The position numbers and the translations under genes are program-made. From Octopus sinensis (taxonomy: Eukaryota), in contig NC_043010.1 in NCBI RefSeq assembly GCF_006345805.1, positions 60,512,001-60,576,000 of the forward strand: 64,000 nucleotides of DNA, in the 5' to 3' direction. The notes beneath the pieces are model-generated. The model saw only the letters and a program-made list of their open reading frames with translations. It ran no database searches and was not told the DNA's origin. Position 1 is the first letter of the stretch; each line of letters starts with the position of its first letter. Of the stretch, positions 1-64,000 are shown piece after piece.

Positions 1-686
1 TTCCTAATAATGACCCATACAATCTCGATGTCCACTACCATCCACACAGTAAGAAGGACATCACAATTCTGAGAGCATCTGACAAAGACACTGGAAACAA
101 TGCTTTCCTCACATATGGAATACTGAGATCCAATGATAAAAACCTGTTTACAGTGAACTCACACACTGGTGTGTTATCTTTCTCTCGCACAGTTTACCAA
201 AATGATGCAGGAACATATGAGCTGCAGTTTATAGTGAAAGACGGTGGTACTCCAGTTCAATCAGCAACAACTGCTATAATACTAACACTGTTTGTTAGTA
301 ATGATACATCTCCAATGTTGACTGCTGTGCCATTCCAGTCTGGTCACGACCTGAATATGACTTGGGTAATTATCATTGTAGCAGCAGCTGTAATACTATC
401 TGTGGCTATTGTAGTGTCCATAACACTGTGTGTTTTCAGATGTATTAATCACACAAATAACTCACCCACAACAGCAGAGAATCCCAACTTTCTCTCTCAG
501 ACTGAGATGAGACAATTACTGTATCAGACCAACAATCCTGTTGCAATAACGAGAAATGCAGAAGAGATATTTAACCGAAATCTTCAGACAATAAAATCTA
601 AAAGTCAGTTTTTTCTGGAGATGGAACAGACACCAGATGAATGGAAATTCTCAACAACACAAAGGAGACTTCCACCTGTGCCTCAG
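1..686 (+). CDS. Pcdh: Protocadherin U0, 3' part of large exon (EC6, TM, juxtamembrane tail); 5' end lies outside the window
   Basis: Open frame from position 3 (PNNDPYNLDVHY...RRLPPVPQ), essentially identical to the other copies; donor CAG|GTAAAT at 686/687. Symbol is family-level only. Confidence 0.96.
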
Positions 687-1146
687 GTAAATATTATTTT
701 AAACAATTCTATTGTTTGATAGCATTTTTGTATAACATTCATGAAGACATATTTTAAATATCTAGTTTTATTTACATGTTATGTTCTTTATATTTTCTCA
801 GTGCCCTTTTTGATAGTTTTACATTTTGCAGATGTCTTAAATTTAAAATTTCCAAATATTTTATTAAAGTAGTATCTTTGTTTTGTTTACTCCAAAATAT
901 TTTAATTTGCTTAGTATGTAAATATAATAGATCTAAAATTTTCACATACTTCATTAAATGAGTTTTCCGTTTTGTTTATCACTTCTCCAAGTTCTTTCTA
1001 TTAACTTAGTAGATCTTTAAAATTACATTATTTCTGCACATTTTAACAGCATTCCTTCCTCGAGTCTTACTGGAAACATTCTAGAATATAAATGCGAATG
1101 TTTCTTTGATTTAACATTATGTTTCACTCTGTTTTCTAATCACCAG

Positions 1147-1535
1147 AGATGTGATTCAATCCATAGTCAAGGACGTCGTACCAGTTCCATCATGTCTTAC
1201 AACAGTGACACCTTAACATCCCAAAAGGACAGAGAAGCTAGCAAGAGTAATGGCAAGACTAAACCATATGATGAGATACCTGCAGAACCAGGTAACTTTT
1301 ATCAAAACATAACATATAAATGTAATTGCCTTTATTACTGTAGGACAATATATAATGTTATGCTTAGTGTAATATAAGATCTATGTTTCTATCTTTATAC
1401 ATTGGAGTTGTTATATTGAAATGTAATTTGTGTTTGTATATTTGATATTTTGCAGAATATACCAATGACAATCCAGTGGCAGCCACAATACTAAAGGGAC
1501 AACAAATACAAGATACCTATCTACAGCCAACATAG
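1147..1535 (+). CDS. Pcdh: U0 cytoplasmic exons 2 (1147-1291) and 3 (1456-1535, ends at TAG)
   Basis: Acceptor CACCAG|AGATGT (phase 0, matches exon 1 donor); donor CCAG|GTAAC (phase 1); acceptor TTTTGCAG|AA. Spliced frame RCDSIHSQ...YDEIPAEP-EYTNDNP...TYLQPT* is open. Confidence 0.85.
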
Positions 1536-2798
1536 TAGATGTTCCATGACTATTGTTAAATGATTCTCTCACACACCCAATATTTTACATTGATTTAAAG
1601 CATTAATATGATATTTACCACTCATAAAGCTTTCATTGTCATTGATATTGAGCCCTAATTAACACTAAATAGTACAAATATTGTCCTGTATAACCATCAT
1701 TGGCTTATTTAAAACAGTTGACACCACTCGTTTGTTATGGCTTCATATAACATTAAATGTTACTGCATTTTACTCTACAAAGTATGAAAAATAAAAAAGC
1801 CTGGTCAGGAATTGTCAGATGTTGTTACATAAACAAACAATTATTATAGTTCCACTTATATTAATTAAGCTTCTGATTGTTAATTTTCCCTTTTAGATTT
1901 ATAATTTTCATTTGTATAACAGAAAAACCTCCTGGAGCTAACCAGCAAAATACAATTACACATTATTTAATGTTCCTTTCATGATATAATTTGCCCATAC
2001 GATTCTATAGATTCTTCTAATATCACCAAAAATATTTGAGATAGCTTTACATTATACTACATTGTAACATTTAGTAAGTTAGTTTTGAGAGGGAAACATT
2101 AATATTTTAATAAAAGTAAGAATTAATTTTATTCCTCACCTTTACATTAATATGACTAATAAGCCATGATTCTATTTTGAATAAGAAATATTGCTAAAGG
2201 ATTTTTACATAGGTGAGATATTGAGGTGATAATGGTTAAATATTAAATACATTTCCTCAAAATCACAATGTTCTAACATATTTCTCTTTATTCTTCTATA
2301 CTTTGTATGTCAAAAGCTATGGGTTTGTCACATTCATTTCTTTATAGATAACAAGTAAAATATACAGAACTGTTTAAAAAAAAAATATATTATGACTGAT
2401 TGTAGTTTTGTAGTTACCAATTATAACATTAAATATAAAAAGATATTTCTATTTCAAAAATAATTAAAAGGAATGTAAAGATGAAATGGTTTGATTATTA
2501 AAACTAAATATATAATGTTCTGTGGAAATTATCAGTCTTGTTTATTTTAACACAACTTCTCATATTTGATATGTTTGTGTGACACAGACAACATTGCAGT
2601 AATTTCCTATTGGATGAGAGAGATTTTCTATATTTCTTTCAATATTGAAAGTGAGGCTGATAGCTTTTTTCTTTGTTCATCATACACACAATTGTGTGTG
2701 TGTGTGTGGAGGACATAGAGTTGTAACTAGCACACACCAGCATCTGGCTAACATCTCACCTCCCACTACATACAGCAACTGTCACACTATTATATCAG

Positions 2799-3131
2799 CA
2801 GTTACACAGGAACAGCAGCAGCAGCTGCAGTAACACAGGAACACTACTACAACAGCAGCAGTACCACTATAATACCACTACAGCAGCAGCAGCAGCAGTT
2901 GGAGTGGAACACTACAGCAGGATACACATCATCCATCACACACAACTACAGTGAAGGATTAAACAATGCAGGTAAGTCTCCCCCTCTTTCTCTTTATTAT
3001 CTTTTCATATTCATTATAACATTTATATTATTTGTGTTTCTTAATGAAAGACAGGGTAAGGATAATATCTAAAATGTCTGCCATGTTGTATATATACAGG
3101 GACTGGGACAGTGGAGGATCGAGAGATCTAG
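2799..3131 (+). CDS. U0 putative exons 4 (2799-2971) and 5 (3100-3131); alternative C-terminal tail or spliced 3'UTR
   Basis: Strong donor GCAG|GTAAGT at 2971/2972 and acceptor TATACAG|GG at 3099/3100 in all copies; 5' acceptor (TATATCAG|CAG) and coding status are inferred. Confidence 0.45.
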
Positions 3132-5856: not shown

Positions 5857-6048
5857 GTGAGTTAGCTTGTTAGATTAAAAGAAACATTTTGAATTATTTA
5901 GAGCACATGAAAAGACATACAAACAATAATCATTTATATAATGTTTATTATAACTTCGAATGAACTTATTTTATTGTACTTAATGTTTAAATATTTGTTG
6001 TCTTTTCTAGCAATTTCTCCTGCTGAAATGTGATGAAGAATTCCAGAC

Positions 6049-8445
6049 ATGACAGCATATATTGGTCTACTGTGTCTTCTACCTTTACTGATCACCCTTG
6101 TACTGTCCATAGATATTACATACCATGTCAAAGAAGAAGGCAGACCTCACACCTATATAGGAGACATTGCTGTTGACTCCAACTTATCACACCCTCTCAC
6201 ACATCAACAACACACTCTTATTACATTTACACAACTACAAAGGACAGTCGAGAGTGGTTCTCACTTATTTAATGTCACCAACTCAGGAAAACTATACACT
6301 ACTCAAACACTGGATGCTGAGTCTCTGTGTACATACAACAAGGAATGTTCCAGAATAGTTAAAGTCGCAGTGAGGAAAGAAGAAGCATTTATGAAAATTC
6401 TCAAAATAAAAATATTAATAGAAGACATCAATGACCATTCACCAGAATTTCCACAAAATGAAGTTGAAATTGAATTTTCTGAAAGTGATAGTAAAGGAAC
6501 TAGAATCTCTCTTCTGAATGCCATTGATGAAGATATTTCCATAAAAAATTCACAAATTACATATATGATTGAGAAAAGAAAGAGAGAACCCTTTTCTCTC
6601 TCTGTCACAAAACGTGATGGTATTTTTATACCTGAACTAATTCTAGATGACAAATTAGACAGGGAAATAAAAGATTCATATATGTTGACCCTTGAAGCCA
6701 AAGATGGAGGGAACCCACCCAAAACAGCTACACTCAAGGTACATATATTTGTGACAGATGTCAATGATAACATTCCTGTATTTCCTCAGAAACTTTACAA
6801 CATTTCTATCAATAATTCACATCAAAGACATTTACCAATTCTTTCTTTAAAAGCCACAGATCAAGATTCTGGACAAAATGGAAAGGTTTCATATTATTTC
6901 AACCATAAAACATCTCGAAATATCCAGAAATATTTTGTATTAAATAAGAAAACTGGGGATTTATTTTTACATGATAATTTTCAGTTTAGTAAAAAGCAGT
7001 CTTATAAATTATTTATTGAAGCAAGAGATGGAGGCAAGCAACCCAAAAAATCTGTTGCAGCAGTTCAGATTCACGTAGTCAATAACCAAAATAATGCACC
7101 ATTGATAAATATAGATTTTGTATCTCCTTTAACTGAGAGTTCCGCAGCAGTTTCAGAAGCAAGTAAAATTGGTAGTTTTATAGCTTATGTTATGGTCACT
7201 GACACTGATAGTGGACCTAATGGTGAGGTTATCTGTGATTTAAAACATGATAAATTTAAACTTGCCAAAATAGATTCTAAAGAATATAAAATGATTGTTA
7301 AGGGTCATCTTGACAGAGAAATAAGGGACCACTATAAAGTATCTATTATGTGTCATGACATGGGGTCACCTCAACTAGAAAGTAAAAAATATTTCTCTGT
7401 CAAAGTAACTGATGTCAATGATGTAGAACCACATTTTACCAAAGAGACATTCCAATTCCTCACCTATGAAAACCAGAAAGTTGACTTCCCTATTGGCTTC
7501 ATCAATGCTACAGACCCTGATCTTGGAGATGGAGGCCAACTTACATATTCTATCATCAATGATAACAACAATGATAACATTCCTTTCCAACTGACAAAAT
7601 ATGGATTTGTTTCTACATCACAATCAATAGATCGAGAAATGAAAGACATCTATAAGTTCAAGGTTTTAGTGAAAGATAATGGAACACCTTCTCTCAATGA
7701 CACTGCCAATATTGTTATTGAGATTCTAGATAAAAATGATAATGCTCCGTATTTTACGTTTCCTAATAATGACCCTTACAATCTAGATGTCCACTACCAT
7801 CCACACAGTAAGAAGGACATCACTATTCTGAAAGCATCTGACAAAGACACTGGAAACAATGCTTTCCTCACATATGGAATACTGAGATCCAATGATAAAA
7901 ACCTGTTTACAGTGAACTCACACACTGGTGTGTTATCTTTCTCTCGCGCAGTTTACCAAAATGATGCAGGAACATATGAGCTGCAGTTTATAGTGAAAGA
8001 CGGTGGTACTCCAGTTCAATCAGCAACAACTGCTATCATACTAACACTGTTTGTTAGTAATGATACATCTCCAATGTTGACTGCTGTGCCATTCCAGTCT
8101 GGTCACGACCTGAATATGACTTGGGTAATTATCATTGTAGCAGCAGCTGTAATACTATCTGTGGCTATTGTAGTGTCCATAACACTGTGTGTTTTCAGAT
8201 GTATTAATCACACAAATAACTCACCCACAACAGCAGAGAATCCCAACTTTCTCTCTCAGACTGAGATGAGACAATTACTGTATCAGACTAACAATCCTGT
8301 TGCAATAACGAGAAATGCAGAAGAGATATTTAACCGAAATCTTCAGACAATAAAATCTAAAAGTCAGTTTTTTCTGGAGATGGAACAGACACCAGATGAA
8401 TGGAAATTCTCAACAACACAAAGGAGACTTCCACCTGTGCCTCAG
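6049..8445 (+). CDS. Pcdh: Protocadherin U1 large exon (799 aa: signal peptide, EC1-EC6, TM, juxtamembrane tail)
   Basis: Hydrophobic signal peptide; cadherin motifs (DINDHSPEF, LDRE, DVNDNIPVF, ATDQDSG, DKNDNAPYF); EC1 Cys-X5-Cys loop (LCTYNKEC) typical of protocadherins; TM WVIIIVAAAVILSVAIVVSITLCVF; acceptor at 6010/6011, donor at 8445/8446. Confidence 0.97.
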
Positions 8446-8592: not shown

Positions 8593-8981
8593 AGATGTGA
8601 TTCAATCCATAGTCAAGAACGTCGCACCAGTTCCATCATGTCTTACAACAGTGACACCTTAACATCCCAAAAGGACAGAGAAGCTAGCAAGAGTAATGGC
8701 AAGACTAAACCATATGATGAGATACCTGCAGAACCAGGTAACTTTTATCAAAACATAACATATAAATGTAATTGCCTTTATTACTGTAGGACAATATATA
8801 ATGTTATGCTTAGTGTAATACAAGATCAATGTTTCTATCTTTATATATTGGAGTTGTTATATTGAAATGTAATTTGTGTGTGTGTATTTGATATTTTACA
8901 GAATATACCAATGACAATCCAGTGGCAGCCACAATACTAAAGGGACAACAAATACAAGATACGTATCTACAGCCAACATAG
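8593..8981 (+). CDS. Pcdh: U1 cytoplasmic exons 2 (8593-8737) and 3 (8902-8981)
   Basis: Same AG/GT sites, phases and lengths (145, 80 nt) as the other copies. Confidence 0.85.
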
Positions 8982-10118
8982 TAGATGTTCCATGACTATT
9001 GTTAAATGATTCTCTCACACACCAAATCTTATACAATACTTTATATTCATATAAAAATATCAACTCTATGTTTCTTTCACACATCACACATAAAGGGCTT
9101 TACAGTGGCATCTATTATGACCCCTAATTTGCAGCACTGATACATGAAACACTACGAACAACCTATTCTGCATTACCAACGTTCATTATTACAAAATAGT
9201 TGTTTTCCTCTCAGTCGTAGTATATACATTTCACTAAACATACACAACTTAATCTGAGTCATTCTCAGAAGTTTAGTTATAGAATTTTAGTTTGATATGA
9301 ATTCTACCATTTAACATTATCATACTCACTTTTACCATTGTTTTATTTTATTTGCATTTCGTCTTTTGTTCATACCATTTTATGTTTTATGTTCAATGTA
9401 TTTTAAATTTTATTCATCAATACCAGCATTAATGGATAAGTGTTGATTCCCACAACATTCAATAAAGTGTTGTCACCTATATTGTTAATATACTAAACTT
9501 ACCGACATATTTATATAGTTTTTTTAAGTATTAAGATTTAAATGTTATATATTTTATGAAATATGACATAAAACATATCAGAATATCATGTGTCTTTTTA
9601 AAATGGAAATAGTTTTGCTTCTCCTAATTTACTTTGTTTATAGTTTGACTAATCATGTAAACTTCTTAAATAATTATGTTTGATGACTTACCATGAAATC
9701 AATTTGTTTCTAATAGAAATCTCGAATATGTATTCTTATAGTCAAGTTAATAATAACCCATCAAATATTAAGAAATATAAGTATATATAAATCTTATTTC
9801 CGAACATTAAATATATAATGTAGTGTTTTTATTAAATAGAAGAAGTAATGCTGCTTGTGTCATTAATATGACTTCTGTTGTTTGATGTGTTTGTGTGACA
9901 CAGACATCATTGCAGTAATTTCCTATTGGATGAGAGAGATTTTCTATATTTCTTTCAATATTGAAAGTGAGGCTGATAGCTTTTTTCTTTGTTCATCATA
10001 CACACAATTGTGTGTGTGTGTGTGTGTGGAGGACATAGAGTTGTAACTAGCACACACCAGCATCTGGCTAACATCTCACCTCCCACTACATACAGCAACT
10101 GTCACACTATTATATCAG

Positions 10119-10450
10119 CAGTTACACAGGAACAGCAGCAGCAGCTGCAGTAACACAGGAACACTACTACAACAGCAGCAGTACCACTATAATACCACTA
10201 CAGCAGCAGCAGCAGCAGTTGGAGTGGAACACTACAGCAGGATACACATCATCCATCACACACAACTACAGTGAAGGATTAAACAATGCAGGTAAGTCTC
10301 TCTCTCTTTCTCTTTATTATCTTTTCATATTCATTATAACATTTATATTATTTGTGTTTCTAATGAAAGACAGGGAAAGGATAATATCTAAAATGTCTGC
10401 CATGTTGTATATATACAGGGACTGGGACAGTGGAGGATCGAGAGATCTAG
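10119..10450 (+). CDS. U1 putative exons 4 (10119-10291) and 5 (10419-10450)
   Basis: GCAG|GTAAGT donor and ATACAG|GG acceptor; coding status inferred. Confidence 0.45.
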
Positions 10451-11979: not shown

Positions 11980-12172
11980 GTGAGTTAGCTTGTTAGATTA
12001 GAAGAAACATTTTGAATTATTTAGAGCACATGTAAAAGACATACAATCAATAATCATTTATATAATGGTTATTATAACTTCAAATTAACTTATTTTATTC
12101 TACTTAATGTTTAAATATTTGTTGTCTTTTATAGCAAATTCTCCTGCTGAAATGTGATGAAGAATCCCAGAC

Positions 12173-14569
12173 ATGACAGCATATATTGGTCTACTGTGTC
12201 TTCTATATTTACTGATCACCCTTGTACTGTCCATAGATATTATATACCATGTCAATGAAGAAGGCAGTCCTCACACCTATATAGGAGACATTGCTGTTGA
12301 CTCTAACTTATCACACCCTCTCACACATCAACAACACACTCTCATTACATTTACACAACTACAAAGGACAGTCGAGAGTGGTTCTCACTTATTTAATGTC
12401 ACCAACTCAGGAAAACTATACACTACTCAGACACTGGATGCTGAGTCTCTGTGTACATACAACAAGGAATGTTCCAGAATAGTTAAGGTAGCAGTGAGGA
12501 AAGAAGAAACTTTTATGAAAATTCTCAAAATAAAAATATTAATAGAAGACATTAATGACCATTCTCCAGAATTTCCGAAGAATGAAATCACAATAAAGTT
12601 TTTAGAGAGAGATTTTAAAGGTACTAAAATCACTCTTCTAAATGCCATTGATGAAGATATTTCAATAAAAAATTCCCAAATTACATATATGATTAAGAAA
12701 AATAAAAGAGAACCATTTTCTCTCTCTGTTACAAAACAGAAGGGTATTTTCATACCTGATCTCATTCTAGAAGATAGATTAGACAGGGAACTCAAAGACT
12801 ATTATATGTTGAAACTTGAAGCTAAAGATGGAGGGAATCCACCAAAAACAGCTACACTCAAGGTACACATATCTGTGACAGATGTTAATGATAACACACC
12901 TGTATTTCCACAGGAAATCTACAACATCTCTGTAAGTAATTCACATCAAAGACATTTACCAATTCTTACTTTAAAAGCCACAGATCAAGATTCTGGAGAC
13001 AATGGAAAGATTTCTTACCATTTCAACCATAAAACATCTCGAAATATCCAGAAATATTTTGTATTAGATAAGAACACTGGAGATTTGTTTTTACATGATA
13101 ATTTTCAGTTTAATAAAAAGCAGTCTTATAAATTGTTTGTTGAAGCAAGAGATGGAGGAAATCCACCTCTAAAGTCAGTAACCAGAGTTCACATTTATGT
13201 GATTAATAACCAGAATACTGCTCCATTGATAAATATAGATTTTGTATCTCCTTTATCAGAGAGTTCAGCAGCAGTTTCAGAAGCAAGTAAAATTGGTAGT
13301 TTTATAGCTTATGTTATGGTCACTGACACTGATAGTGGACCTAATGGTGAGGTTATCTGTGATTTAAAACATGATAAATTTAAACTTGCCAAAATTGATT
13401 CTAAAGAATATAAAATGATTGTTAAGGGCCCTCTTGACAGAGAAATAAGGGACCACTATAAAGTATCTATTGTGTGTCATGACATGGGGTCACCTCAACT
13501 AGAAAGTAAAAAATATTTCTCTGTCAAAGTAACTGATGTCAATGATGTAGAACCACATTTTACCAAAGAGACATTCCAATTCCTCACCTATGAAAACCAG
13601 AAAGTTGACTTCCCTATTGGCTTCATCAATGCTACAGACCCAGATCTTGGAGATGGAGGCCAACTTACATATTCTATCATCAATGATAACAACAATGATA
13701 ACATTCCTTTCCAACTGACAAAATATGGATTTATTTCTACATCACAACCAATAGATCGAGAAATGAAAGACATCTATAAGTTCAAGGTTTTAGTGAAAGA
13801 TAATGGAACACCTTCTCTCAATGACACTGCCAATATTGTTATTGAGATTCTAGATAAAAATGATAATGCTCCGTATTTTACGTTTCCTAATAATGACCCT
13901 TACAATCTCGATGTCCACTACCATCCACACAGTAAGAAGGACATCACAATTCTGAGAGCATCTGACAAAGACACTGGAAACAATGCTTTCCTCACATATG
14001 GAATACTGAGATCCAATGATAAAAACCTGTTTACAGTGAACTCACACACTGGTGTGTTATCTTTCTCTCGCACAGTTTACCAAAATGATGCAGGAACATA
14101 TGAGCTGCAGTTTATAGTGAAAGACGGTGGTACTCCAGTTCAATCAGCAACAACTGCTATCATACTAACACTGTTTGTTAGTAATGATACATCTCCAATG
14201 TTGACTGCTGTGCCATTCCAGTCTGGTCACGACCTGAATATGACTTGGGTAATTATCATTGTAGCAGCAGCTGTAATACTATCTGTGGCTATTGTAGTGT
14301 CCATAACACTGTGTGTTTTCAGATGTATTAATCACACAAATAACTCACCCACAACAGCAGAGAATCCCAACTTTCTCTCTCAGACTGAGATGAGACAATT
14401 ACTGTATCAGACTAACAATCCTGTTGCAATAACGAGAAATGCAGAAGAGATATTTAACCGAAATCTTCAGACAATAAAATCTAAAAGTCAGTTTTTTCTG
14501 GAGATGGAACAGACACCAGATGAATGGAAATTCTCAACAACACAAAGGAGACTTCCACCTGTGCCTCAG
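12173..14569 (+). CDS. Pcdh: Protocadherin U2 large exon (799 aa)
   Basis: Six cadherin repeats plus TM as in U1; acceptor 12134/12135; donor CAG|GTAAAT 14569/14570. Confidence 0.97.
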
Positions 14570-14716: not shown

Positions 14717-15105
14717 AGATGTGATTCAATCCATAGTCAAGAACGTCGTACCAGTTCCATCATGTCTTACAACAGTGACACCTTAACATCCCAAAAGGAC
14801 AGAGAAGCTAGCAAGAGTAATGGCAAGACTAAACCATACGATGAGATACCTGCAGAACCAGGTAACTTTTATCAAAACATAACATATAAATGTAATTGCC
14901 TTTATTACTGTAGGACAATATATAATGTTATGCTTAGTGTAATATAAGATCAGTGTTTCTATCTTTATGTATTGGAGTTGTTATATTGAAATGTAATTTG
15001 TGTTTGTATATTTGATATTTTGCAGAATATACCAATGACAATCCAGTGGCAGCCACAATACTAAAGGGACAACAAATACAAGATACCTATCTACAGCCAA
15101 CATAG
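14717..15105 (+). CDS. Pcdh: U2 cytoplasmic exons 2 (14717-14861) and 3 (15026-15105)
   Basis: Conserved splice sites and phases. Confidence 0.85.
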
Positions 15106-16078: not shown

Positions 16079-16418
16079 CAGTTACACAGGAACAGCAGCA
16101 GCAGCAGCAGTAACACAGGAACACTACTACAACAGCAGCAGTACCACTATAATACCACTACAGCAGTAGCAGCAGCAGTTAGAGTGGAACACTACAGCAG
16201 GATACACATCATCCATCACACACAACTACAGTGAAGGATTAAACAATGCAGGTAAGTCTCTCTCTCTCTCTCTCTTTCTCTTTATTATCTTTTCATATTC
16301 ATTATAACATTTATATTATTTGTGTTTCTAATGAAAGACAGGGTAAGGATAATATCTAAAATGTCTGCCATGTTGTATATATACAGGGACTGGGACAGTG
16401 GAGGATCGAGAGATCTAG
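16079..16418 (+). CDS. U2 putative exons 4 (16079-16251) and 5 (16387-16418); in-frame CAG>TAG in the Gln run
   Basis: Conserved donor and acceptor; TAG at about 16167 in the otherwise open frame. Confidence 0.35.
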
Positions 16419-25296: not shown

Positions 25297-25638
25297 CAGT
25301 TACACAGGAACATCAGCAGCAGCAGCAGTAACACAGGAACACTACTACAACAGCAGCAGTACCACTATAATACCACTACAGCAGCAGCAGCAGCAGTTCG
25401 AGTGGAACACTACAGCAGGATACACATCATCCATCACACACAACTACAGTGAAGGATTAAACAATGCAGGTAAGTCTCTCTCTCTCTCCCTCTCTTTCTC
25501 TTTATTATCTTTTCATATTCATTATAACATTTATATTATTTGTGTTTCTAATGAAAGACAGGGTAAGGATAATATCTAAAATGTCTGCCATGTTGTATAT
25601 ATACAGGGACTGGGACAGTGGAGGATCGAGAGATCTAG
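25297..25638 (+). CDS. U3 putative exons 4 (25297-25469) and 5 (25607-25638)
   Basis: Conserved donor and acceptor; coding status inferred. Confidence 0.45.
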
Positions 25639-49050: not shown

Positions 49051-49439
49051 AGATGTGATTCAATCCATAGTCAAGAACGTCGTACCAGTTCCATCATGTC
49101 TTACAACAGTGACACCTTAACATCCCAAAAGGACAGAGAAGCTAGCAAGAGTAATGGCAAGACTAAACCATATGATGAGATACCTGCAGAACCAGGTAAC
49201 TTTTATCAAAACATAACATATAAATGTAATTGCCTTTATTACTGTAGGACAATATATAATGTTATGCTTAGTGTAATACAAGATCAATGTTTCTATCTTT
49301 ATATATTGGAGTTGTTATATTGAAATGTAATTTGTGTTTGTATATTTGATATTTTGCAGAATATACCAATGACAATCCAGTTGCAGCCACAATACTAAAG
49401 GGACAACAAATACAAGATACCTATCTACAGCCAACATAG
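49051..49439 (+). CDS. Pcdh: U6 cytoplasmic exons 2 (49051-49195) and 3 (49360-49439)
   Basis: Conserved splice sites and phases. Confidence 0.85.
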
Positions 49440-50402
49440 TAGATGTTCCATGACTATTGTTAAATGATTCTCTCACACACCAAATCTTATACAATAATTT
49501 ATATTCATATAAAAATATCAACTCTATGTTTCTTTCACACATCGCACACATAAAGGGCCCACAGCATCTTACTTATGATGTATTATTTACATCTCTGATA
49601 CTTAATGTAAATATTTAAACTATATTAACATACTTTGTTAGTTTGTTTAGATTATTTTTTCATATTTATTTTCAACTTACATTTTACATGAAATGATAAT
49701 TAGCTTTTAACTTGTCATAATTTTCTTTTTCTTGAGTATACAATTATATTTCAAAAACACTGAAGGAGATTGTAGAAATAGAACTAATTCTTTTCTCACA
49801 ATTATATAGACATGATTTAGAGACTAAGCCATTTGTTTATAATGTTATTTTATGCATCATTTATTGTCATCGTTAATGATAAGATGTATTTTCTCAAATT
49901 TACAACATTGTAGCTTATTTCATTTATCTCATCCTTCTTATATTTCATCTCAAAAGTTGAGGGTTTTAGTTTAAGTTTAAAATCAATATTAGCGTCAAAT
50001 ATAATTTTGAATTTAAATAATTATAAAGATTAATTTCTAGACTAGAATATCAAATAGTTTATAACTTGAAGATAATTGGAAAATATGAAGTTTCTTTGCT
50101 TATTAATATTAAACACAAACGAAATTCTTAGCACTACAAACTGCTTTACTTCCATGTGGCTTCTTTTATTTGATGTGTTTGTGTGACACAGACATCATTG
50201 CAGTAATTTCCTATTGGATGAGAGAGATTTTCTATATTTCTTTCAATATTGAAAGTGAGGCTGATAGCTTTTTTCTTTGTTCATCATACACACAATTGTG
50301 TGTGTGTGTGTGGAGGACATAGAGTTGTAACTAGCACACACCAGCATCTGGCTAACATCTCACCTCCCACTACATACAGCAACTGTCACACTATTATATC
50401 AG

Positions 50403-50563
50403 CAGTTACACAGGAACAGCAGCAGCAGTAACACAGGAGCACTACTACAACAGCAGCAGTACCACTATAATACCACTACAGCAGCAGCAGTTGGAGTGGA
50501 ACACTACAGCAGGATACACATCATCCATCACACACAACTACAGTGAAGAATTAAACAATGCAG

Positions 50564-53635: not shown

Positions 53636-54120
53636 AATTGTACTCAGTACTCCCTATAAATAAACCATAAGATGTTTAGAATGTAGATGTAGAAGCCATG
53701 CCAAGTGAAACATAGTCCACTGACCAGATGTATGAACTCGGTCACACCAACTGGTTTCATTATCTTCCTTAGAAAAGTACTTGGATGTCTTCTATCAATA
53801 TATTTTTTAATCCAGCATTGCACTTCTAGCAGTAGAAGTTCAATGTTCAGTTACTTTTGGACTTCACTTTTCTACGGCTTTTGTTTCCTATCATCCATTC
53901 AGCCACGTCGTCACAACAAAGACAGCTGTAACTGTTATCAGAAGAGAAAAGTTGACATATTTTAAATAGTTCTGATGATTCTGATGGTATATATTTGAGG
54001 ATAGAAATAATATTTACAAAATAGTTTTTGCTTTTATGCCTTATTTTGTTTTAATTCTACATAATATTTTTATCTTTTGTAGCAATTTCTCCTGCTAAAG
54101 TGTGATGAAGAATTCCAGAC

Positions 54121-56520
54121 ATGACAGCATATATTGGTCTACTGTGTCTTCTACATTTACTGATCACCCTTGTACTGTCCATAGATATTATATACCATGT
54201 CAATGAAGAAGGCAGTCCTCACACCTATATTGGAGACATTGCTGTTGACTCCAACTTATCACACCCTCTCACACATCAACAACACACTCTCATTACATTT
54301 ACACAACTACAAAGGACAGTCGAGAGTGGTTCTCACTTATTTAATGTCACCAACTCAGGAAAACTATACACTACTCAAACACTGGATGCTGAGTCTCTGT
54401 GTACATACAACAAGGAATGTTCCAGAATAGTTAAAGTAGCAGTGAGGAAAGAAGAAACATTTATGAAAATATTAAAAATAAGAATATTAATAGATGACAT
54501 TAATGACCATTCTCCAGAATTTCTAAAGAATGAAGTTCAAATTGAATTTTCTGAGCGGGAGAGTAAAGGTACTAAAATTCCTCTTCCAAATGCCATTGAT
54601 AAAGATATTTCAATAAAGAATTCTCAAATAACATATATGATCAAGAAAAATAAAAGAGAACCATTTTCTATCTCAATCAAAAAAAGACATGATGGTGTCT
54701 CCATACCTGAATTAATATTGGAAGATAAATTAGACAGAGAACTCAAAGACAAATATATATTGACTTTGGAAGCTAAAGATGGAGGCTACCCTCCCAAAAC
54801 AGCTACACTCAAGGTACACATATCTGTGACAGATGTCAATGATAATACACCTGCATTTTCACAGAAACTCTACAACATCTCTATAAGTAATTCACATCAA
54901 AGACATTTACCAATTCTTACTTTAAAAGCCACAGATCAAGATTCAGGAGACAATGGAAAGATTTCTTACCATTTCAACCATAAAACATCTCAAAATGTCC
55001 TGACATATTTTGTATTAAATGAGAAGTCTGGAGATCTATTTTTACATGATAATTTTCATTTTAGTAAAAAGCAGTCTTATAAATTATTTATTGAAGCACG
55101 AGATGGAGGAAATCCACCCTTAAGTTCTGTAACTAAAGTCCAGATTTACATTATTAATAACCAGAATAATGCTCCATTGATTAATATAGATTTTGTATCT
55201 CCTTTATCAGAGAGTTCAGCAGCTGTTTCAGAAGCAAGTAAAATTGGTAGTTTTATAGCTTATGTTATGGTCACTGACACTGATAGTGGACCTAATGGTG
55301 AGGTTATCTGTGATTTAAAACATGATAAATTTAAACTTGCCAAAATAGATTCTAAAGAATATAAAATGATTGTTAAGGGCCATCTTGACAGAGAAATAAG
55401 GGACCACTATAAAGTATCTATTGTGTGTCATGACATGGGGTCACCTCAACTAGAAAGTAAAAAATATTTCTCTGTCAAAGTAACTGATGTCAATGATGTA
55501 GAACCACATTTTACCAAAGAGACATTCCAATTCCTCACCTATGAAAACCAGAAAGTTGACTTCCCTATTGGCTTCATCAACGCTACAGACCCTGATCTTG
55601 GAGATGGAGGCCAACTTACATATTCTATCATCAATGATAACAACAATGATAACATTCCTTTCCAACTGACAAAATATGGATTCATTTCTACATCACAATC
55701 AATAGATCGAGAAATGAAAGACATCTATAAGTTCAAGGTTTTAGTGAAAGATAATGGAACACCTTCTCTCAATGACACTGCCAATATTGTTATTGAGATT
55801 CTAGATAAAAATGATAATGCTCCGTATTTTACATTTCCTAATAATGACCCTTACAATCTAGATGTCCACTACCATCCACACAGTAAGAAGGACATCACAA
55901 TTCTGAGAGCATCTGACAAAGACACTGGAAACAATGCTTTCCTCACATATGGAATACTGAGATCCAATGATAAAAACCTGTTTACAGTGAACTCACACAC
56001 TGGTGTGTTATCTTTCTCTCGCACAGTTTACCAAAATGATGCAGGAACATATGAGCTGCAGTTTATAGTGAAAGACGGTGGTACTCCAGTTCAATCAGCA
56101 ACAACTGCTATCATACTAACACTGTTTGTTAGTAATGATACATCTCCAATGTTGACTGCTGTGCCATTCCAGTCTGGTCACGACCTGAATATGACTTGGG
56201 TAATTATCATTGTAGCAGCAGCTGTAATACTATCTGTGGCTATTGTAGTGTCCATAACACTGTGTGTTTTCAGATGTATTAATCACACAAATAACTCACC
56301 CACAACAGCAGAGAATCCCAACTTTCTCTCTCAGACTGAGATGAGACAATTACTGTATCAGACTAACAATCCTGTTGCAATAACGAGAAATGCAGAAGAG
56401 ATATTTAACCGAAATCTTCAGACAATAAAATCTAAAAGTCAGTTTTTCCTGGAGATGGAACAGACACCGGATGAGTGGAAATTCTCCACAACACAAAGGA
56501 GACTTCCACCTGTGCCTCAG
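54121..56520 (+). CDS. Pcdh: Protocadherin U7 large exon (800 aa)
   Basis: Six cadherin repeats plus TM; acceptor 54082/54083; donor 56520/56521. Confidence 0.97.
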
Positions 56521-56838: not shown

Positions 56839-57229
56839 AGATGTGATTCAATCCATAGTCAAGAACGTCGCACCAGTTCCATCATGTCTTACAACAGTGA
56901 CACCTTAACATCCCAAAAGGACAGAGAAGCTAGCAAGAGTAATGGCAAGACTAAACCATATGATGAGATACCTGCAGAACCAGGTAACTTTTATCAAAAC
57001 ATAACATATAAATGTAATTGCCTTTATTACTGTAGGACAATATATAATGTTATGCTTAGTGTAATACAAGATCAATGTTTCTATCTTTATATATTGGAGT
57101 TGTTATATTGAAATGTAATTTGTGTGTTTGTATATTTGATATTTTGCAGAATATACCAATGACAATCCAGTTGCAGCCACAATACTAAAGGGACAACAAA
57201 TACAAGATACCTATCTACAGCCAACATAG
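56839..57229 (+). CDS. Pcdh: U7 cytoplasmic exons 2 (56839-56983) and 3 (57150-57229)
   Basis: Conserved splice sites and phases. Confidence 0.85.
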
Positions 57230-58375: not shown

Positions 58376-58618
58376 CTTCTCTTATTTGATGTGTTTGTGT
58401 GACACAGACAACATTGCAGTAATTTCCTATTGGATGAGAGAGATTTTCTATATTTCTTTCAATATTGAAAGTGAGGCTGATAGCTTTTTTCTTTGTTCAT
58501 CATACACACAATTGTGTGTGTGTGTGTGGAGGACATAGAGTTGTAACTAGCACACACCAGCATCTGGCTAACATCTCACCTCCCACTACATACAGCAACT
58601 GTCACACTATTATATCAG

Positions 58619-58944
58619 CAGTTACACAGGAACAGCAGCAGCAGTAACGCAGGAACACTACTACAACAGCAGCAGTACCACTATAATACCACTACAGCAG
58701 CAGCAGCAGCAGTTGGAGTGGAACACTACAGCAGGATACACATCATCCATCACACACAACTACAGTGAAGGATTAAACAATGCAGGTAAGTCTCTCTCTC
58801 TTTCTCTTTATTATCTTTTCATATTCATTATAACATTTATATTATTTGTGTTTCTAATGAAAGACAGGGTAAGGATAATATCTAAAATGTCTGCCATGTT
58901 GTATATATACAGGGACTGGGACAGTGGAGGATCGAGAGATCTAG
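58619..58944 (+). CDS. U7 putative exons 4 (58619-58785) and 5 (58913-58944)
   Basis: Conserved donor and acceptor; coding status inferred. Confidence 0.45.
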
Positions 58945-62075: not shown

Positions 62076-62705
62076 CAGGCATGGCTGTGTGGTAAGAAGC
62101 TTGCTTTCCAACCACATGATTCTGGGTTCAGTTCCTCTGTATGGCACCTTATGCAAGTGTCTTCTACTATGGCCTTAGGACATAGTATATATATATTGAG
62201 ACCCCCTTCGGTCATGAATGACCGTGGGATTGCACCTAGAAAGTTACCCTCCCAGGCACAAGTCCGGGCAAAGTTTTTCATGGAAGACCAGCAGTCGCCC
62301 ATGCATACTGGCCTCCCCTCTCCACACCACCAGTGTTATCCAAGGGAAAGGCAAAGGCCGATACAGCTTGGCACCAGTGATGTCACAACTCATTTCTACA
62401 GTTGAGTGAACTGGAGCAACGTGAAATAAAGTGTCTTTCTCAAGAACACAACACGCAGCCCGGTCCGGGCTTCAAACTCACAACTTCACGATCGTAAGCT
62501 CAACGCTCTAACCACTGAGCCATGCGCCTTCTGTATATATATATATATATACATACATATATATGTGTGTGTGTGTGTGTTCCCCTGCCATCATTTGACA
62601 ACCGATGTTGATGTGTTTACATCCCTGTAACTTGGCAGTTCATCAAAAGAGAATGATAGAATAAATACTGGGCTTACAAAGAATCAGTTCTGAAACAAAT
62701 AAGAG
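62076..62705 (+). mobile_element. tRNA-derived SINE (second family) split by a nested minus-strand SINE
   Basis: Head GGCATGGCTGTGTGGTAAGAAGCTTGC...GGGTTCAGTTCC at 62076-62180; body resumes after the TA/TG repeat at about 62575-62705. Confidence 0.75.
62198..62529 (-). mobile_element. tRNA-derived SINE (third family), minus strand
   Basis: Minus 5' end AGGCGCATGGCTCAGTGGTTAGAGCG...GAGTTTGAAGCCC (A- and B-box-like), then a non-tRNA body. Confidence 0.85.
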
Positions 62706-63012
62706 AATATATCTGCATACATAGAAATACACGAGAGAGAACAAATGAAAGAATGAGCACTCAACACATTTAGTTACATGTCGATGTGGTGTGTGTGTGT
62801 GTGTGTGGCTTGTCCATAAGTTACTTGGTGGCATAGCTGGAGCAAGTGCAACATGAAAGGCAACCGGTACTCAATGTATAGTGTTTGGAAACAAGAAGGG
62901 TATCCAGCCATGGAAACAATGCTAAGCAATTTGAGTTTAATTCCAAGATATTTAGTATCTCACTTTGGTATTCATCTTTTCTATATTAGTTTACAATACA
63001 TCAGTATACCTG

Positions 63013-63210
63013 AAGGTGGCAAGCTAGCAGATTCATTAGTAACCTGGACAGAATACTGTCAATACATTCTGTGTTGAAATACTGCCAAGGTCAGCTCTGC
63101 CATACATCCTTTCAGTAAAATATGCACCAGTTGAAAACTGGGACCAATGTAATAAACTTAACCCCACCCAGGAAATTGCTGGCCTTCTGCCAAAATTTGG
63201 AACCGTTATT
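63013..63210 (+). mobile_element. Decayed tRNA-derived SINE
   Basis: aaggtggcaagctagcaga head; caccagttgaaaactgggaccaatgtaa body; ggccttctgcc near the end. Confidence 0.65.
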
Positions 63211-63586
63211 TCAGTTTATATATATTTTTTAAGAAATATGTGAATCTGTTCAGGAGTTATCGTCATTAAACCTGAAATTTTTAATTGCTAACTCTGAAAA
63301 TAGACTGAATTTTCACGGAAAAGCACAATGAAAAACAACGTAAACATGACGTTTACTATTTCAGATTAAGATGGAACGTTTATTCGAGGGAGATAACTCT
63401 CGTTATGTATGGTCTTAAGGATTGTCAGATCTCAGAAGACTATACAAATTGCAGCTAATGGAATAGAAGTTTCACAATGATTATTATAAATAGAATGAAG
63501 TTGGTTAAATTATACATAAACTTTAAATGTGTTTCTGGTGTTTTGTAGAAATTTCTCCTGCTGAAATGTGATGAAGAATTCCAGAC

Positions 63587-64000
63587 ATGACAGCATATAT
63601 TGGTCTACTGTGTCTTCTACATTTACTGATCACCCTTGTACTGTCCATAGATATTACATACCATGTCAAGGAAGAAGACAGACCTCACACCTATATTGGA
63701 GACATTGCTGTTGACTCCAACTTATCACACCCTCTCACACATCAACAACACACTCTCATTACATTTACACAACTACAAAGGACAGTCGAGAGTGGTTCTC
63801 ACTTATTTAATGTCACCAACTCAGGAAAACTATACACTACTCAAACACTGGACGCTGAGTCTCTGTGTACCTACAACAAGGAATGTTCCAGAATAGTTAA
63901 AGTAGCTGTGAGAAAAGGACAAACCTTTATGAAAATCCTTAAAATAAAAATATTGATACAGGACATCAATGACCATTCTCCAGAATTTCCACAGAATGAA
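63587..64000 (+). CDS. Pcdh: Protocadherin U8, start of large exon (signal peptide and EC1); continues beyond the window
   Basis: MTAYIGLLCLLHLLITLVLSIDITYHVKEEDRP...RKGQTFMKILKIKILIQDINDHSPEFPQNE; acceptor at 63548/63549. Confidence 0.95.
   Translation, partial: MTAYIGLLCLLHLLITLVLSIDITYHVKEEDRPHTYIGDIAVDSNLSHPLTHQQHTLITFTQLQRTVESGSHLFNVTNSGKLYTTQTLDAESLCTYNKECSRIVKVAVRKGQTFMKILKIKILIQDINDHSPEFPQNE

What the first reader, a model, noticed from the sequence alone, without database searches (positions are those of the whole stretch)
1..64000. Tandem protocadherin array with a built-in variable (EC2-EC3) / constant (EC1, EC4-tail) code
Seen: at least 9 head-to-tail copies. About 1.3 kb from EC4 to the exon end (e.g. 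7150-8445) differs at only scattered positions between copies, including third codon positions, and most of EC1 is equally uniform. EC2-EC3 carry dense replacement changes: EC2 SESDSKGTRIS / LERDFKGTKIT / LESQFKGTKIS / SEKDRKGEMVS / SEIGRKGDKIP / SERESKGTKIP; EC3 KQPKKSVAAVQIHVV / NPPLKSVTRVHIYVI / NPPLSSVTKVQILII. Established: vertebrate clustered protocadherins bind homophilically through antiparallel EC1:EC4 and EC2:EC3 contacts, EC2-EC3 are the most diversified, and cephalopod protocadherins expanded independently. Inference: a convergently evolved cell-identity barcode array.
Basis: partly seen in the sequence, partly recalled or inferred. Interest (0 to 1): 0.85.

Follow-up and report, generated by a model that had tools for sequence, protein, structure and literature searches.

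The report
Octopus protocadherin array with regional gene conversion
This is part of the known octopus protocadherin gene array. Most of each gene is kept nearly identical between copies by DNA copying (gene conversion), and only the EC2-EC3 part stays old and different, the pattern already known from vertebrate protocadherin clusters.

Summary
The window (Octopus sinensis-like chromosome contig C14, 60.512-60.576 Mb) holds 9 head-to-tail protocadherin copies: 7 full (one frameshifted) and 2 cut by the window ends. They belong to a ~26-unit subfamily inside a >1.6 Mb same-strand array.

Each unit is a complete gene, not a variable exon. It has an inferred non-coding 5' exon with its own promoter, a 2.4-kb exon (six EC domains, TM, proximal tail) and two small private C-terminal exons.

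Four blocks per unit are ~98-99% identical between copies:
- the promoter/5' exon block;
- the leader plus residues 1-94;
- EC4 to the end of the big exon;
- exon 3-intron-exon 4.

Two of these blocks include non-coding DNA. Synonymous divergence is 0.04-0.06 in the constant coding parts and 0.5-0.6 in residues 95-218 and 294-368. dN/dS is about 0.2-0.3 everywhere, and M1a/M2a site models find no positive selection.

Argonauta paralogs share 35 fixed species-specific residues, all in constant parts. An independent O. vulgaris assembly shows the same pattern.

So the "variable/constant code" comes from region-restricted gene conversion. EC2-EC3 is old, purified and mosaic, not fast-evolving. 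The recognition-barcode function is plausible by homology but untested. Cephalopod arrays and vertebrate regional conversion are both published, so novelty is modest.

The parts
1..686 (+). 3' part of the big exon of gene 0 (EC6, TM, proximal tail); its ATG lies upstream of the window at C14:60510311 (L018)
1147..1535 (+). Gene 0: exon 3 (1147-1291), 164-nt intron, exon 4 with TAG (1456-1535); homogenised C-terminal block
2571..2971 (+). Conserved non-coding block: inferred promoter (inverted CCAAT at 2603) and 5' non-coding exon ending AATGCAG|GTAAGT, for the gene at 6049
6011..8445 (+). Gene 1 big exon: acceptor YnTAG|, 38-nt leader, ATG 6049, signal peptide, EC1-EC6, TM, proximal tail, donor CAG|GTAAAT
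6331..7152 (+). Gene 1 divergent block (residues 95-368: end of EC1, EC2, EC3, first strand of EC4)
8593..8981 (+). Gene 1 exon 3 (8593-8737), intron, exon 4 with stop (8902-8981)
9887..10291 (+). Promoter/5' exon block for the gene at 12173
12135..14569 (+). Gene 2 big exon (ATG 12173)
12455..13276 (+). Gene 2 divergent block
14717..15105 (+). Gene 2 exon 3-intron-exon 4
15847..16251 (+). Promoter/5' exon block for the gene at 19787
19749..22183 (+). Gene 3 big exon (ATG 19787)
20069..20890 (+). Gene 3 divergent block
23780..24168 (+). Gene 3 exon 3-intron-exon 4 (preceding intron 1.6 kb)
25067..25469 (+). Promoter/5' exon block for the gene at 27430
27392..29828 (+). Gene 4 big exon (ATG 27430); 1-nt deletion near 29597 shifts the frame in the juxtamembrane tail (pseudogene or assembly indel)
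27712..28536 (+). Gene 4 divergent block
29976..30364 (+). Gene 4 exon 3-intron-exon 4
31005..31405 (+). Promoter/5' exon block for the gene at 34683
34645..37079 (+). Gene 5 big exon (ATG 34683)
34965..35786 (+). Gene 5 divergent block
37444..37832 (+). Gene 5 exon 3-intron-exon 4
38737..39131 (+). Promoter/5' exon block for the gene at 45748; its 6.6-kb intron carries the retroelement insertion
45710..48147 (+). Gene 6 big exon (ATG 45748)
46030..46854 (+). Gene 6 divergent block
49051..49439 (+). Gene 6 exon 3-intron-exon 4
50175..50563 (+). Promoter/5' exon block for the gene at 54121
54083..56520 (+). Gene 7 big exon (ATG 54121)
54403..55227 (+). Gene 7 divergent block
56839..57229 (+). 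Gene 7 exon 3-intron-exon 4
58391..58785 (+). Promoter/5' exon block for the gene at 63587
63549..64000 (+). Gene 8 big exon, 5' part (ATG 63587); beyond the window this copy shifts frame at residue ~576 (L041)

Best explanation
The window is a stretch of the octopus protocadherin super-array. Each ~6-11 kb unit is a complete, separately promoted gene.

Shown:
- A 2.4-kb exon encodes the signal peptide, six cadherin repeats, the TM helix and the proximal tail. It is bounded by a splice acceptor 38 nt before the ATG and by a CAG|GTAAAT donor.
- Two small private exons encode the last 74 residues.

Inferred:
- A ~400-nt non-coding 5' exon with a near-identical promoter lies 1.8-6.6 kb upstream of each big exon.

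Shown by sequence statistics: the copies evolve in concert through region-restricted interlocus gene conversion. Four blocks are kept ~98-99% identical:
- the promoter/5' exon block;
- the leader plus residues 1-94;
- residues 369-799;
- exon 3-intron-exon 4.

The segments between them are old (the promoter-distal intron, residues 95-368, the intron after the big exon, the intergenic DNA). EC2-EC3 is therefore variable because it is not homogenised. It keeps dS of about 0.5-0.6 under ordinary purifying selection (omega about 0.2). Short conversion patches reshuffle EC2 and EC3 cassettes among paralogs. Longer-range patches also link subfamilies: EC5/EC6 across 60-200 kb, and EC1 across 0.5 Mb.

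Inferred from homology to vertebrate clustered and delta protocadherins: the proteins form antiparallel EC1-4 trans dimers. The ~25 distinct EC2-EC3 versions in this subfamily would set isoform-level specificity. The uniform EC1, EC4, EC5-6, TM and tail would keep binding geometry, cis-assembly and signalling interchangeable. Concerted evolution would then do the job that shared constant exons do in vertebrate alpha/gamma clusters. The reason EC2-EC3 escapes is also inferred. The likeliest cause is selection against loss of distinct specificities, reinforced by divergence blocking heteroduplex formation.
For: Anatomy:
- Searches give the acceptor, the donor and an exon of 2397-2400 nt.
- every unit has its own exons 3 and 4. 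There are 27 exon-3 copies on C14 in the array and no single shared copy downstream.
- the 405-nt block ending AATGCAG|GTAAGT differs by p=0.011 among 8 units. It is found only in this array (26 copies on C14). One copy lies before the first gene and none after the last.

Conversion:
- dS is 0.037 (residues 369-799) and 0.063 (20-94), against 0.62 and 0.50 in the two divergent cores.
- Non-coding intron 2 differs by p=0.024, like its flanking exons (0.016 and 0.008). The intron after the big exon differs by 0.3-0.46, and DNA beyond about -100 upstream of the ATG by ~0.6.
- There are 35 fixed differences between 14 O. sinensis and 10 Argonauta hians paralogs. All lie in constant parts and none in residues 95-368.
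- Consensus GC3 is 0.318 in constant parts and 0.215 in the variable part, Fisher p=0.002.
- Segment trees are incongruent: AU p<1e-30 for HV1 against HV2, and p about 0.02 against the middle segment.
- Distant paralog L045 has pS 0.01-0.04 only at residues 51-100. L048 has pS 0.02-0.07 at residues 476-550. Four other distant paralogs are saturated throughout and serve as controls.
- Three adjacent paralogs in an independent O. vulgaris assembly show p=0.018-0.028 in the constant part and 0.10-0.16 in the variable cores.

Protein family.

Functional analogy: PMC5001838 and PMC5106212 for EC2:EC3 specificity. PMC1852091 and PMC4978886 for regional conversion sparing EC2-EC3 in vertebrates.
Against: - No transcript evidence was available, so the 5' exon and promoter assignment rests on splice motifs and position only.
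- No binding or expression data exist for these genes, so the recognition-code function is an analogy.
- Single-cell data in O. vulgaris show about 19 PCDH genes per cell. Some are cell-type specific and some broad (PMC9712504). That neither proves nor excludes stochastic choice.
- The site-model test was my own fixed-topology implementation on 25 sequences. Its power is limited and it is sensitive to recombination, so weak positive selection at a few sites (e.g. 144, 276) is not excluded.
- Selection and a divergence barrier could not be separated as the cause of EC2-EC3 escape.
- In vertebrates EC1:EC4 also contributes to specificity (PMC5106212). A uniform EC1/EC4 is a difference from the vertebrate code, not a copy of it.
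- At least five copies in the subfamily carry frameshifts or stops. These could be pseudogenes or long-read indel errors.
Confidence: 0.8

Rival explanations
1. A very recent burst of tandem duplication, followed by diversifying (positive) selection or local hypermutation that drove EC2-EC3 apart while the rest stayed as duplicated.
For: Replacement differences are dense in EC2-EC3 (dN 0.10-0.15 against 0.007 in the constant part). A published whole-gene analysis dates a recent octopod expansion to 8-14 Ma (PMC9795677). About 20% of HV1 and MID codons fall in a neutral class.
Against: - Synonymous divergence is raised as much as replacement divergence, so omega is 0.20-0.29 in both compartments.
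- M2a is not better than M1a.
- Promoter-distal, intronic and intergenic DNA is unalignable between most units, so the units are old.
- Species-specific residues shared by all paralogs need homogenisation after speciation.
- Near-identical patches inside otherwise saturated distant paralogs cannot come from recent whole-gene duplication.
Confidence: 0.05
2. The uniform segments are an assembly or polishing artefact: collapsed repeats, or consensus polishing with mismapped reads.
For: The assembly has unplaced contigs (C11541, C11250) that duplicate part of the region. Several copies carry single-base frameshifts typical of long-read errors.
Against: - The same constant/variable contrast appears in an independent O. 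vulgaris assembly, GCA_951406725.2.
- It also appears among Argonauta hians paralogs, with species-specific fixed residues.
- Constant regions still carry scattered private differences and patchwork dimorphisms, e.g. A.KIG against D.EVD at residues 371-376.
- Each unit has a unique flank.
Confidence: 0.03
3. The constant parts are uniform because of extreme constraint on the DNA or RNA itself, for example conserved double-stranded RNA structures needed for the heavy A-to-I editing of cephalopod neural transcripts. No gene conversion is involved.
For: From my own knowledge, not tested here: coleoid editing is reported to slow synonymous evolution around edited sites, and protocadherins are reported among edited transcripts. 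Identity stops sharply at exon borders at both ends of the big exon.
Against: - Constraint cannot make 14 paralogs acquire the same 35 lineage-specific substitutions.
- It cannot create near-identity patches between otherwise saturated genes while other paralogs of equal protein conservation stay saturated.
- A non-transcribed or 5' non-coding promoter block and an intron are equally uniform.
- GC3 is raised, as expected for biased conversion.
- Constraint may still help keep converted tracts intact.
Confidence: 0.05
4. Homogenisation comes only from unequal crossing-over (whole-unit birth and death), without short-tract conversion.
For: Tandem same-strand arrays with near-identical blocks are good substrates. 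Unit spacing and intron lengths vary (6.1-11.1 kb). The unplaced contigs suggest structural variants.
Against: Single unequal crossovers homogenise whole units, including the variable block and the spacers. Here a divergent internal block is flanked on both sides by homogenised blocks, and EC2 and EC3 have different genealogies. That needs internal patches, meaning conversion or double exchanges. Unequal crossing-over probably contributes to copy-number change as well.
Confidence: 0.07

Closest known systems
Cephalopod protocadherin arrays (Octopus bimaculoides chromosome 14, O. vulgaris, O. sinensis, Amphioctopus; Albertin 2015 as cited in PMC6339937; PMC9068888; PMC9795677)
   Same: This window is a piece of that array in an O. 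sinensis-like genome: multi-exonic complete genes, head-to-tail, on one chromosome. Homogenisation by gene conversion has already been suggested in general terms.
   Different: I found no paper in the searched library that resolves which domains are homogenised. None reports the uniform promoter/5' exon block or the cross-subfamily patches. Published dating of the expansions used whole-gene trees.
Vertebrate clustered protocadherins with regional gene conversion (zebrafish, fugu, mammals, Xenopus; PMC1852091, PMC4978886)
   Same: - A ~2.4-kb exon encodes six EC domains, the TM and a short tail.
- The array is tandem and same-strand, with one promoter per unit.
- The 3' part (EC4/5 to the end) is ~99% identical in nucleotides with a discrete boundary.
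- EC2-EC3 has the highest dS and escapes conversion.
- GC3 is raised in converted parts.
   Different: - There are no shared constant exons. Each octopus gene has private C-terminal exons kept alike by conversion.
- The N-terminal two thirds of EC1 and the promoter block are also homogenised.
- A non-coding 5' exon precedes the big exon.
- The expansion has an independent origin.
- No positive selection was detected in EC2-EC3 here.
Mammalian Pcdh-beta cluster
   Same: A tandem array of complete protocadherin genes without constant exons.
   Different: Beta genes are single-exon. The octopus genes have four exons, including two small C-terminal coding exons.
Delta-2 protocadherins (PCDH8, 10, 17, 18, 19)
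   Same: Six EC domains. They are equally good sequence and fold matches (6vg1, 6vg4). The antiparallel EC1-4 dimer is shared (PMC5001838).
   Different: They are non-clustered single genes without paralog arrays or concerted evolution.
Dscam1 (insects) and clustered sDscam (chelicerates)
   Same: A functional analogue as a diversified homophilic recognition family. The chelicerate version uses tandem 5' cassettes and promoter choice (PMC6339937).
   Different: They belong to the immunoglobulin superfamily. Diversity comes from alternative splicing or alternative promoters within one gene.

Membership tests
Protocadherin (six-EC, clustered/delta-2-like) | Six consecutive extracellular cadherin repeats with calcium-binding linker motifs | tested here: met
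   Pfam Cadherin E=7e-74 plus Cadherin_2 at the N-terminus. Full-length alignment to Pcdh-gammaB4 EC1-6 at E=6e-92, and to Pcdh8.1 and PCDH10. The AF2 model shows six beta-sandwich domains, and Foldseek top hits are 6vg1, 6vg4 and 6e6b. DxNDxxP linkers are invariant across 78 homologs.
Protocadherin (six-EC, clustered/delta-2-like) | Single-pass TM and a cytoplasmic tail without the classical cadherin catenin-binding domain | tested here: met
   Predicted helix at 690-719 and a disordered tail. No classical cadherin cytoplasmic-domain family appears among the Pfam hits.
Protocadherin (six-EC, clustered/delta-2-like) | The whole ectodomain and TM are encoded by one large exon | tested here: met
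   An uninterrupted exon of 2397-2400 nt lies between an acceptor and a CAG|GTAAAT donor.
Vertebrate-type clustered Pcdh locus (alpha/gamma architecture) | Many variable first exons spliced to one shared set of constant exons | tested here: not met
   Each unit has its own exon 3 and exon 4, 0.15-1.6 kb downstream of its big exon. There are 8 copies in the window and 27 on C14 in the array. This agrees with PMC9068888.
Vertebrate-type clustered Pcdh locus (alpha/gamma architecture) | Tandem, same-orientation units, each with its own conserved promoter | tested here: inconclusive
   Orientation and tandem order are met. One ~540-bp near-identical block per unit, with an inverted CCAAT and a 5' splice donor, is consistent with a private promoter plus 5' exon. 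No transcript or TSS data were available.
Vertebrate-type clustered Pcdh locus (alpha/gamma architecture) | Common descent with the vertebrate clusters | not tested
   The literature states independent expansions (PMC9068888, PMC4978886). PDB hits are equally close to delta-2 and clustered types.
Vertebrate-type clustered Pcdh locus (alpha/gamma architecture) | Stochastic promoter choice giving single-cell identity; homophilic trans binding that needs matching EC1-4 | not testable with these tools
   This needs single-cell isoform-resolved expression and aggregation assays.
Concerted evolution by interlocus gene conversion | In the converted region, paralogs within a species are more alike than homologs between species | tested here: met
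   Within-species divergence is 0.3-8%, against 10-17% between O. sinensis and A. hians. There are 35 fixed species differences in constant parts and none in residues 95-368.
Concerted evolution by interlocus gene conversion | Low synonymous and non-coding divergence inside tracts, high outside, with discrete boundaries | tested here: met
   dS is 0.037 against 0.5-0.6. Intron 2 differs by p=0.024 and the promoter block by p=0.011, against 0.3-0.6 for the flanks. Identical tracts exceed expectation in 120 of 120 pairs.
Concerted evolution by interlocus gene conversion | Different genealogies for adjacent segments (mosaicism) | tested here: met
   AU tests reject each segment's tree on the other segments' data. 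The HV1/HV2 rejections are at p<1e-30. For the middle-segment data the other trees are rejected at p about 0.02. Patch identity with distant paralogs L045 and L048.
Concerted evolution by interlocus gene conversion | GC enrichment at third positions in converted tracts | tested here: met
   Consensus GC3 is 0.318 against 0.215, Fisher p=0.002. Amino-acid composition also differs, so this is supportive only.
Diversifying positive selection on a recognition interface | A codon class with dN/dS above 1, or regional dN/dS above the rest of the gene | tested here: not met
   Regional omega is 0.20-0.29 in variable parts and 0.20 in the constant part. M0 omega is 0.13-0.27. The M2a against M1a LRT is 2.6, 2.6 and 0.0. 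Power is limited.

The most novel reading that the evidence does not exclude
The array is a two-tier recognition system maintained by selection on where conversion may act.
- Identical promoters would give every isoform the same chance of being chosen.
- Uniform EC1, EC4, EC5-6, TM and tail would keep all isoforms of a subfamily compatible in binding geometry, cis-assembly and signalling. Concerted evolution would act here as a substitute for constant exons.
- Short-patch conversion would shuffle old EC2 and EC3 cassettes to create new homophilic specificities.
This would be a cephalopod solution to neuronal self/non-self coding that converged on the vertebrate EC2:EC3 logic from an independent gene expansion.
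Probability: 0.3. Interest if true: 0.8.

Novelty: new member of a known kind. Interest (0 to 1): 0.5.

Why it matters
- It gives a concrete, testable map for cephalopod protocadherin function. In this subfamily only residues ~95-368 distinguish ~25 isoforms, so EC2-EC3 swaps are the decisive experiment for a recognition code that evolved independently of vertebrates.
- It shows that a "virtual constant region" can be maintained by concerted evolution instead of by splicing to shared exons.
- Whole-gene trees will under-date these duplications. dS differs ~17-fold between compartments, which bears on the published 8-14 Ma "recent expansion".
- Short reads from the constant blocks (3' two thirds of the coding sequence, exons 3-4, the 5' exon) are expected to be hard to assign to one paralog, so expression studies should target the variable block or the unique 3' UTR.

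Tried and rejected
- Shared constant exons. I searched the window and the genome for the 74-residue C-terminal tail of annotated models. It is present once per unit, so the vertebrate alpha/gamma architecture is rejected.
- Conserved intergenic block as a transposon. Rejected: it occurs only inside this array, once per unit, and is absent after the last gene.
I did not try it another way and used pairwise Nei-Gojobori counts and marginal-likelihood site models instead.
- Gene range of an annotated O. sinensis model, to confirm the 5' exon. It is not on record.
- Mapping variable residues onto the vertebrate trans interface. Only partial: gammaB position 125 aligns to octopus L156, at the edge of the hypervariable stretch 136-154. 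Its partner 253 aligns to H286, which is invariant here.
- Unplaced contigs C11541 and C11250 as simple alternative haplotypes. Unclear: they are collinear, but variable blocks differ by 0%, 4.3% and 8.5%, and one upstream flank matches a neighbouring unit.
- One-to-one orthology of variable blocks between Octopus and Argonauta. Not found: the nearest cross-species distance is about the same as the nearest within-species distance. It is found for some O. vulgaris/O. sinensis pairs.
- The Albertin 2015 and Noonan 2004 papers are not held in the library. They are cited only through papers that quote them.

Full report
**What is in the window**

The window is G000:C14:60512001-60576000, in a 2.72-Gb genome of 13,516 contigs. 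The best named protein matches are Octopus sinensis "protocadherin beta-15-like", followed by Argonauta hians and O. vulgaris.

Nine copies of one protocadherin gene lie head to tail on the + strand:
- a 3' fragment at 1-686;
- seven complete large exons with ATGs at 6049, 12173, 19787, 27430, 34683, 45748 and 54121;
- a 5' fragment from 63587 to the window end.

The copy at 27430 has a 1-nt deletion near 29597 that shifts the frame. The product has six cadherin repeats and aligns over its length to mouse Pcdh-gammaB4 EC1-6 at E=6e-92. It aligns almost as well to delta-2 protocadherins. An AlphaFold model (pLDDT 74) shows six beta-sandwich domains, a TM helix at 690-719 and a disordered tail. 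Its best fold matches are Pcdh8.1, PCDH10 and gammaB4.

**The unit is a whole gene, not a variable exon**

The large exon ends at a CAG|GTAAAT donor, and similarity collapses immediately after it. Annotated O. sinensis models carry 74 further residues. These are encoded once per unit by a 145-nt exon and a final exon (77 coding nt plus the TAG stop) that lie 0.15-1.6 kb downstream of each large exon. There are 8 copies in the window and 27 on C14 in the array. There is therefore no shared constant region of the vertebrate alpha/gamma type, as PMC9068888 states for cephalopods in general.

Upstream, similarity begins exactly at a polypyrimidine-TAG acceptor 38 nt before the ATG. The large exon is therefore not the first exon.

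Each spacer contains one ~540-bp block that is nearly identical between units. Divergence is p=0.011 over the 405 nt ending in AATGCAG|GTAAGT and 0.018 over the next 130 nt. It is 0.28 upstream and 0.26 further downstream. The block occurs only in this array. It has 26 copies on C14, one before the first gene of the subfamily and none after the last. It contains an inverted CCAAT box. I infer that it is the private promoter and non-coding 5' exon of the downstream gene. No transcript data were available to confirm this.

**The constant/variable contrast is real and lies at the DNA level**

I used 16 intact copies of the subfamily from C14. Nei-Gojobori estimates with bootstrap intervals were:

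| Region (residues) | dS | dN/dS |
|---|---|---|
| 20-94 (EC1, constant) | 0.063 | 0.29 |
| 95-218 | 0.62 | 0.24 |
| 219-293 | 0.20 | 0.29 |
| 294-368 | 0.50 | 0.20 |
| 369-799 (constant) | 0.037 | 0.20 |

So dN/dS is the same in both compartments. In all 120 pairs the longest identical tract (median 455 nt) exceeds the 99th percentile of a uniform scatter of that pair's differences.

Non-coding DNA inside the uniform blocks is just as uniform:
- intron 2: p=0.024, between exons at 0.016 and 0.008;
- the promoter block: p=0.011;
- the intron after the large exon: 0.3-0.46;
- the 3' flank, within ~150 bp of the stop: rising to about 0.3-0.4;
- the region beyond about -100 upstream of the ATG: ~0.6, effectively unalignable.

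Purifying selection on the protein cannot explain this pattern. Consensus GC3 is 0.318 in the uniform parts and 0.215 in the divergent part (Fisher p=0.002). The same sign was used for fugu protocadherin conversion (PMC1852091).

**Concerted evolution across species, and not an assembly artefact**

I compared ten Argonauta hians paralogs with fourteen O. sinensis paralogs. They show 35 positions where all copies of one species differ from all copies of the other. Three lie in EC1, 32 in residues 369-799, and none in residues 95-368.

Within-species divergence in the constant parts is 0.3-8%, against 10-17% between species. In residues 95-368, within-species divergence (17-27%) is comparable to between-species divergence (27%).

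Three adjacent paralogs in an independent O. vulgaris assembly (GCA_951406725.2) show p=0.018-0.028 in the constant part and 0.10-0.16 in the divergent cores. They have the same 5'-exon donor motif upstream of each gene. Some O. vulgaris proteins match single O. sinensis copies in the variable block (0/184 and 14/232 differences), while the next-nearest copy is far away. The variable blocks therefore behave as stable identities over that short time.

**No sign of diversifying selection**

I fitted GY94 site models (my own implementation; fixed iqtree topologies; one tree per segment; 25 distinct copies). M0 omega was 0.18, 0.27 and 0.13. M2a against M1a gave LRTs of 2.6, 2.6 and 0.0. About 20% of codons in the first two segments fell in a neutral class.

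EC2-EC3 is old, not fast-evolving.

Amino-acid variability is highest at residues 136-154, 161-177, 186-214, 299-318 and 330-347. It often falls on alternating positions of predicted beta strands, which suggests surface side chains. Mapping to the vertebrate interface was only partial.

**The variable block is a mosaic, and conversion reaches between subfamilies**

Trees for residues 100-218, 219-293 and 294-368 conflict. The AU test gives p<1e-30 for the first and third segments against each other, and about 0.02 for the middle segment's data against the other two trees. Blocks such as EMV/Q/V, YQK.D..TES..LTKTIP, KK..AA and A.KIG/D.EVD are shared in different combinations. All 25 copies examined still have distinct variable blocks, with at least 34 nt differences in about 800 nt.

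Against the neighbouring 73-75%-identical subfamily (60.29-60.41 Mb), dS is saturated in EC2-EC4. It is only 0.01-0.07 in residues 469-518 and 594-668.

Two more distant paralogs also carry near-identical patches:
- A 59%-identical gene 0.5 Mb away (L045) has synonymous difference 0.01-0.04 only at residues 51-100.
- A 66%-identical gene (L048) has 0.02-0.07 only at residues 476-550 and 0.01 at residues 651-675.

Four other distant paralogs are saturated everywhere. This shows that protein conservation alone does not give low synonymous difference.

**Most likely mechanism**

Shown: region-restricted interlocus gene conversion keeps four blocks per unit alike, and unequal crossing-over probably changes copy number. 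The segment encoding the end of EC1, EC2 and EC3 escapes homogenisation and is only patch-shuffled.

Inferred: the escape reflects selection against losing distinct specificities. It would be reinforced by divergence and indels that stop heteroduplex extension. The same barrier explains why tracts end at exon borders, where introns have diverged by insertions.

Inferred by homology: these proteins form antiparallel EC1-4 dimers, with EC2:EC3 giving isoform specificity (PMC5001838). In vertebrates EC1:EC4 contributes subfamily-level specificity (PMC5106212). That fits EC4 being uniform within the subfamily but different from the neighbouring one.

Rivals are scored low for the reasons given in their entries: a recent burst plus selection, an assembly artefact, pure RNA-level constraint, and unequal crossing-over alone.

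**Comparison with what is known**

Cephalopod protocadherin arrays, their full-gene duplication mode and a general suggestion of gene conversion are published (PMC9068888, PMC6339937, PMC9795677). Regional conversion of EC4-6 and the tail, with EC2-EC3 escaping, is well described in vertebrates (PMC1852091, PMC4978886).

Three full-text searches found no domain-resolved description for cephalopods. What this window adds is:
- the same regional pattern in the independent octopus expansion;
- the extra homogenised EC1 and promoter blocks;
- private C-terminal exons kept uniform by conversion;
- long-range patches between subfamilies.

I therefore file it as a new member of a known kind. It is not a vertebrate-type clustered locus, because the shared-constant-exon feature was tested and not met.

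**Consequences and limits**

Whole-gene phylogenies will under-date these duplications. This bears on the published 8-14 Ma "recent expansion" (PMC9795677). Reads from the constant blocks are unlikely to map uniquely, which may matter for the reported ~19 PCDH genes per cell (PMC9712504).

Limits:
- no RNA, read-level or functional data;
- the site-model test is approximate;
- ancestral reconstruction was not available and was not attempted otherwise;
- frameshifts in at least five copies (L021, L026, L041, L043, L044) may be real pseudogenes or indel errors;
- the status of unplaced contigs C11541 and C11250 is unresolved.

Noticed in passing
window 42475-44658: A 5'-truncated non-LTR retrotransposon fragment lies on the minus strand. 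It has a reverse-transcriptase ORF at 43264-44658 (RVT_1 E=7.6e-29, with a PHD/C1-like zinc finger). Its 3' side is followed by a GC-rich 61-bp tandem repeat of 12 copies (42475-43216). GC here is 52% against ~32% elsewhere. It sits in the inferred 5' intron of the gene at 45748 and explains the longest unit spacing (11 kb).
   Followed up: partly
window ~29597 (gene at 27430); also L026, L041, L043, L044 elsewhere in the array: A single-base deletion (CACAAATAAC becomes CACAATAAC) shifts the frame in the juxtamembrane tail. At least four other subfamily copies have frameshifts or stops while their variable blocks are intact. These are either a sizeable pseudogene fraction or long-read indel errors.
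   Followed up: partly
window 6011-6048 and the same leader in every copy: The 38-nt leader of the big exon carries two conserved upstream ATGs. One is a minimal ATG-TGA. The other is an out-of-frame ATGAAG... that overlaps the main start and reads on for more than 35 codons. One database model (P0004) starts from it. This may be translational control.
   Followed up: no
window 9990-10290 and the equivalent 5' exon blocks: The inferred 5' exon holds a (TG)n run and several CAG/CAA repeat runs. Their lengths differ between units by 2-6 nt. These are almost the only differences in an otherwise identical block.
   Followed up: no
G000 contigs C11541 (42.6 kb) and C11250 (26.5 kb): These unplaced contigs are collinear with the left part of the window region. 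Relative to their C14 counterparts, one gene is identical in the variable block but has 5 differences in the constant block. Two others differ by 4.3% and 8.5% in the variable block. One upstream flank matches the neighbouring unit instead. They are either an alternative haplotype with a different conversion history or an unplaced duplicate.
   Followed up: partly
L045 (C14:59987900-59990600), residues 51-100: A ~150-nt EC1 patch is essentially identical at synonymous sites to the window's genes. The surrounding gene is otherwise saturated (59% protein identity) and lies 0.5 Mb away. EC1 homogenisation therefore reaches well beyond the subfamily.
   Followed up: partly
window 1-19 residues of each copy; L018 and L020: The two most upstream members of the subfamily have unrelated signal peptides (MNENVFYL..., MNGNIIYL...) but the same EC1 from residue ~20. 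A conversion boundary therefore sits just after the signal peptide in those genes.
   Followed up: no
window 6303-6773, minus strand: A 156-codon antisense ORF lies inside the big exon of the first gene. I take it to be a chance ORF in AT-rich coding DNA. It was not checked in the other copies.
   Followed up: no
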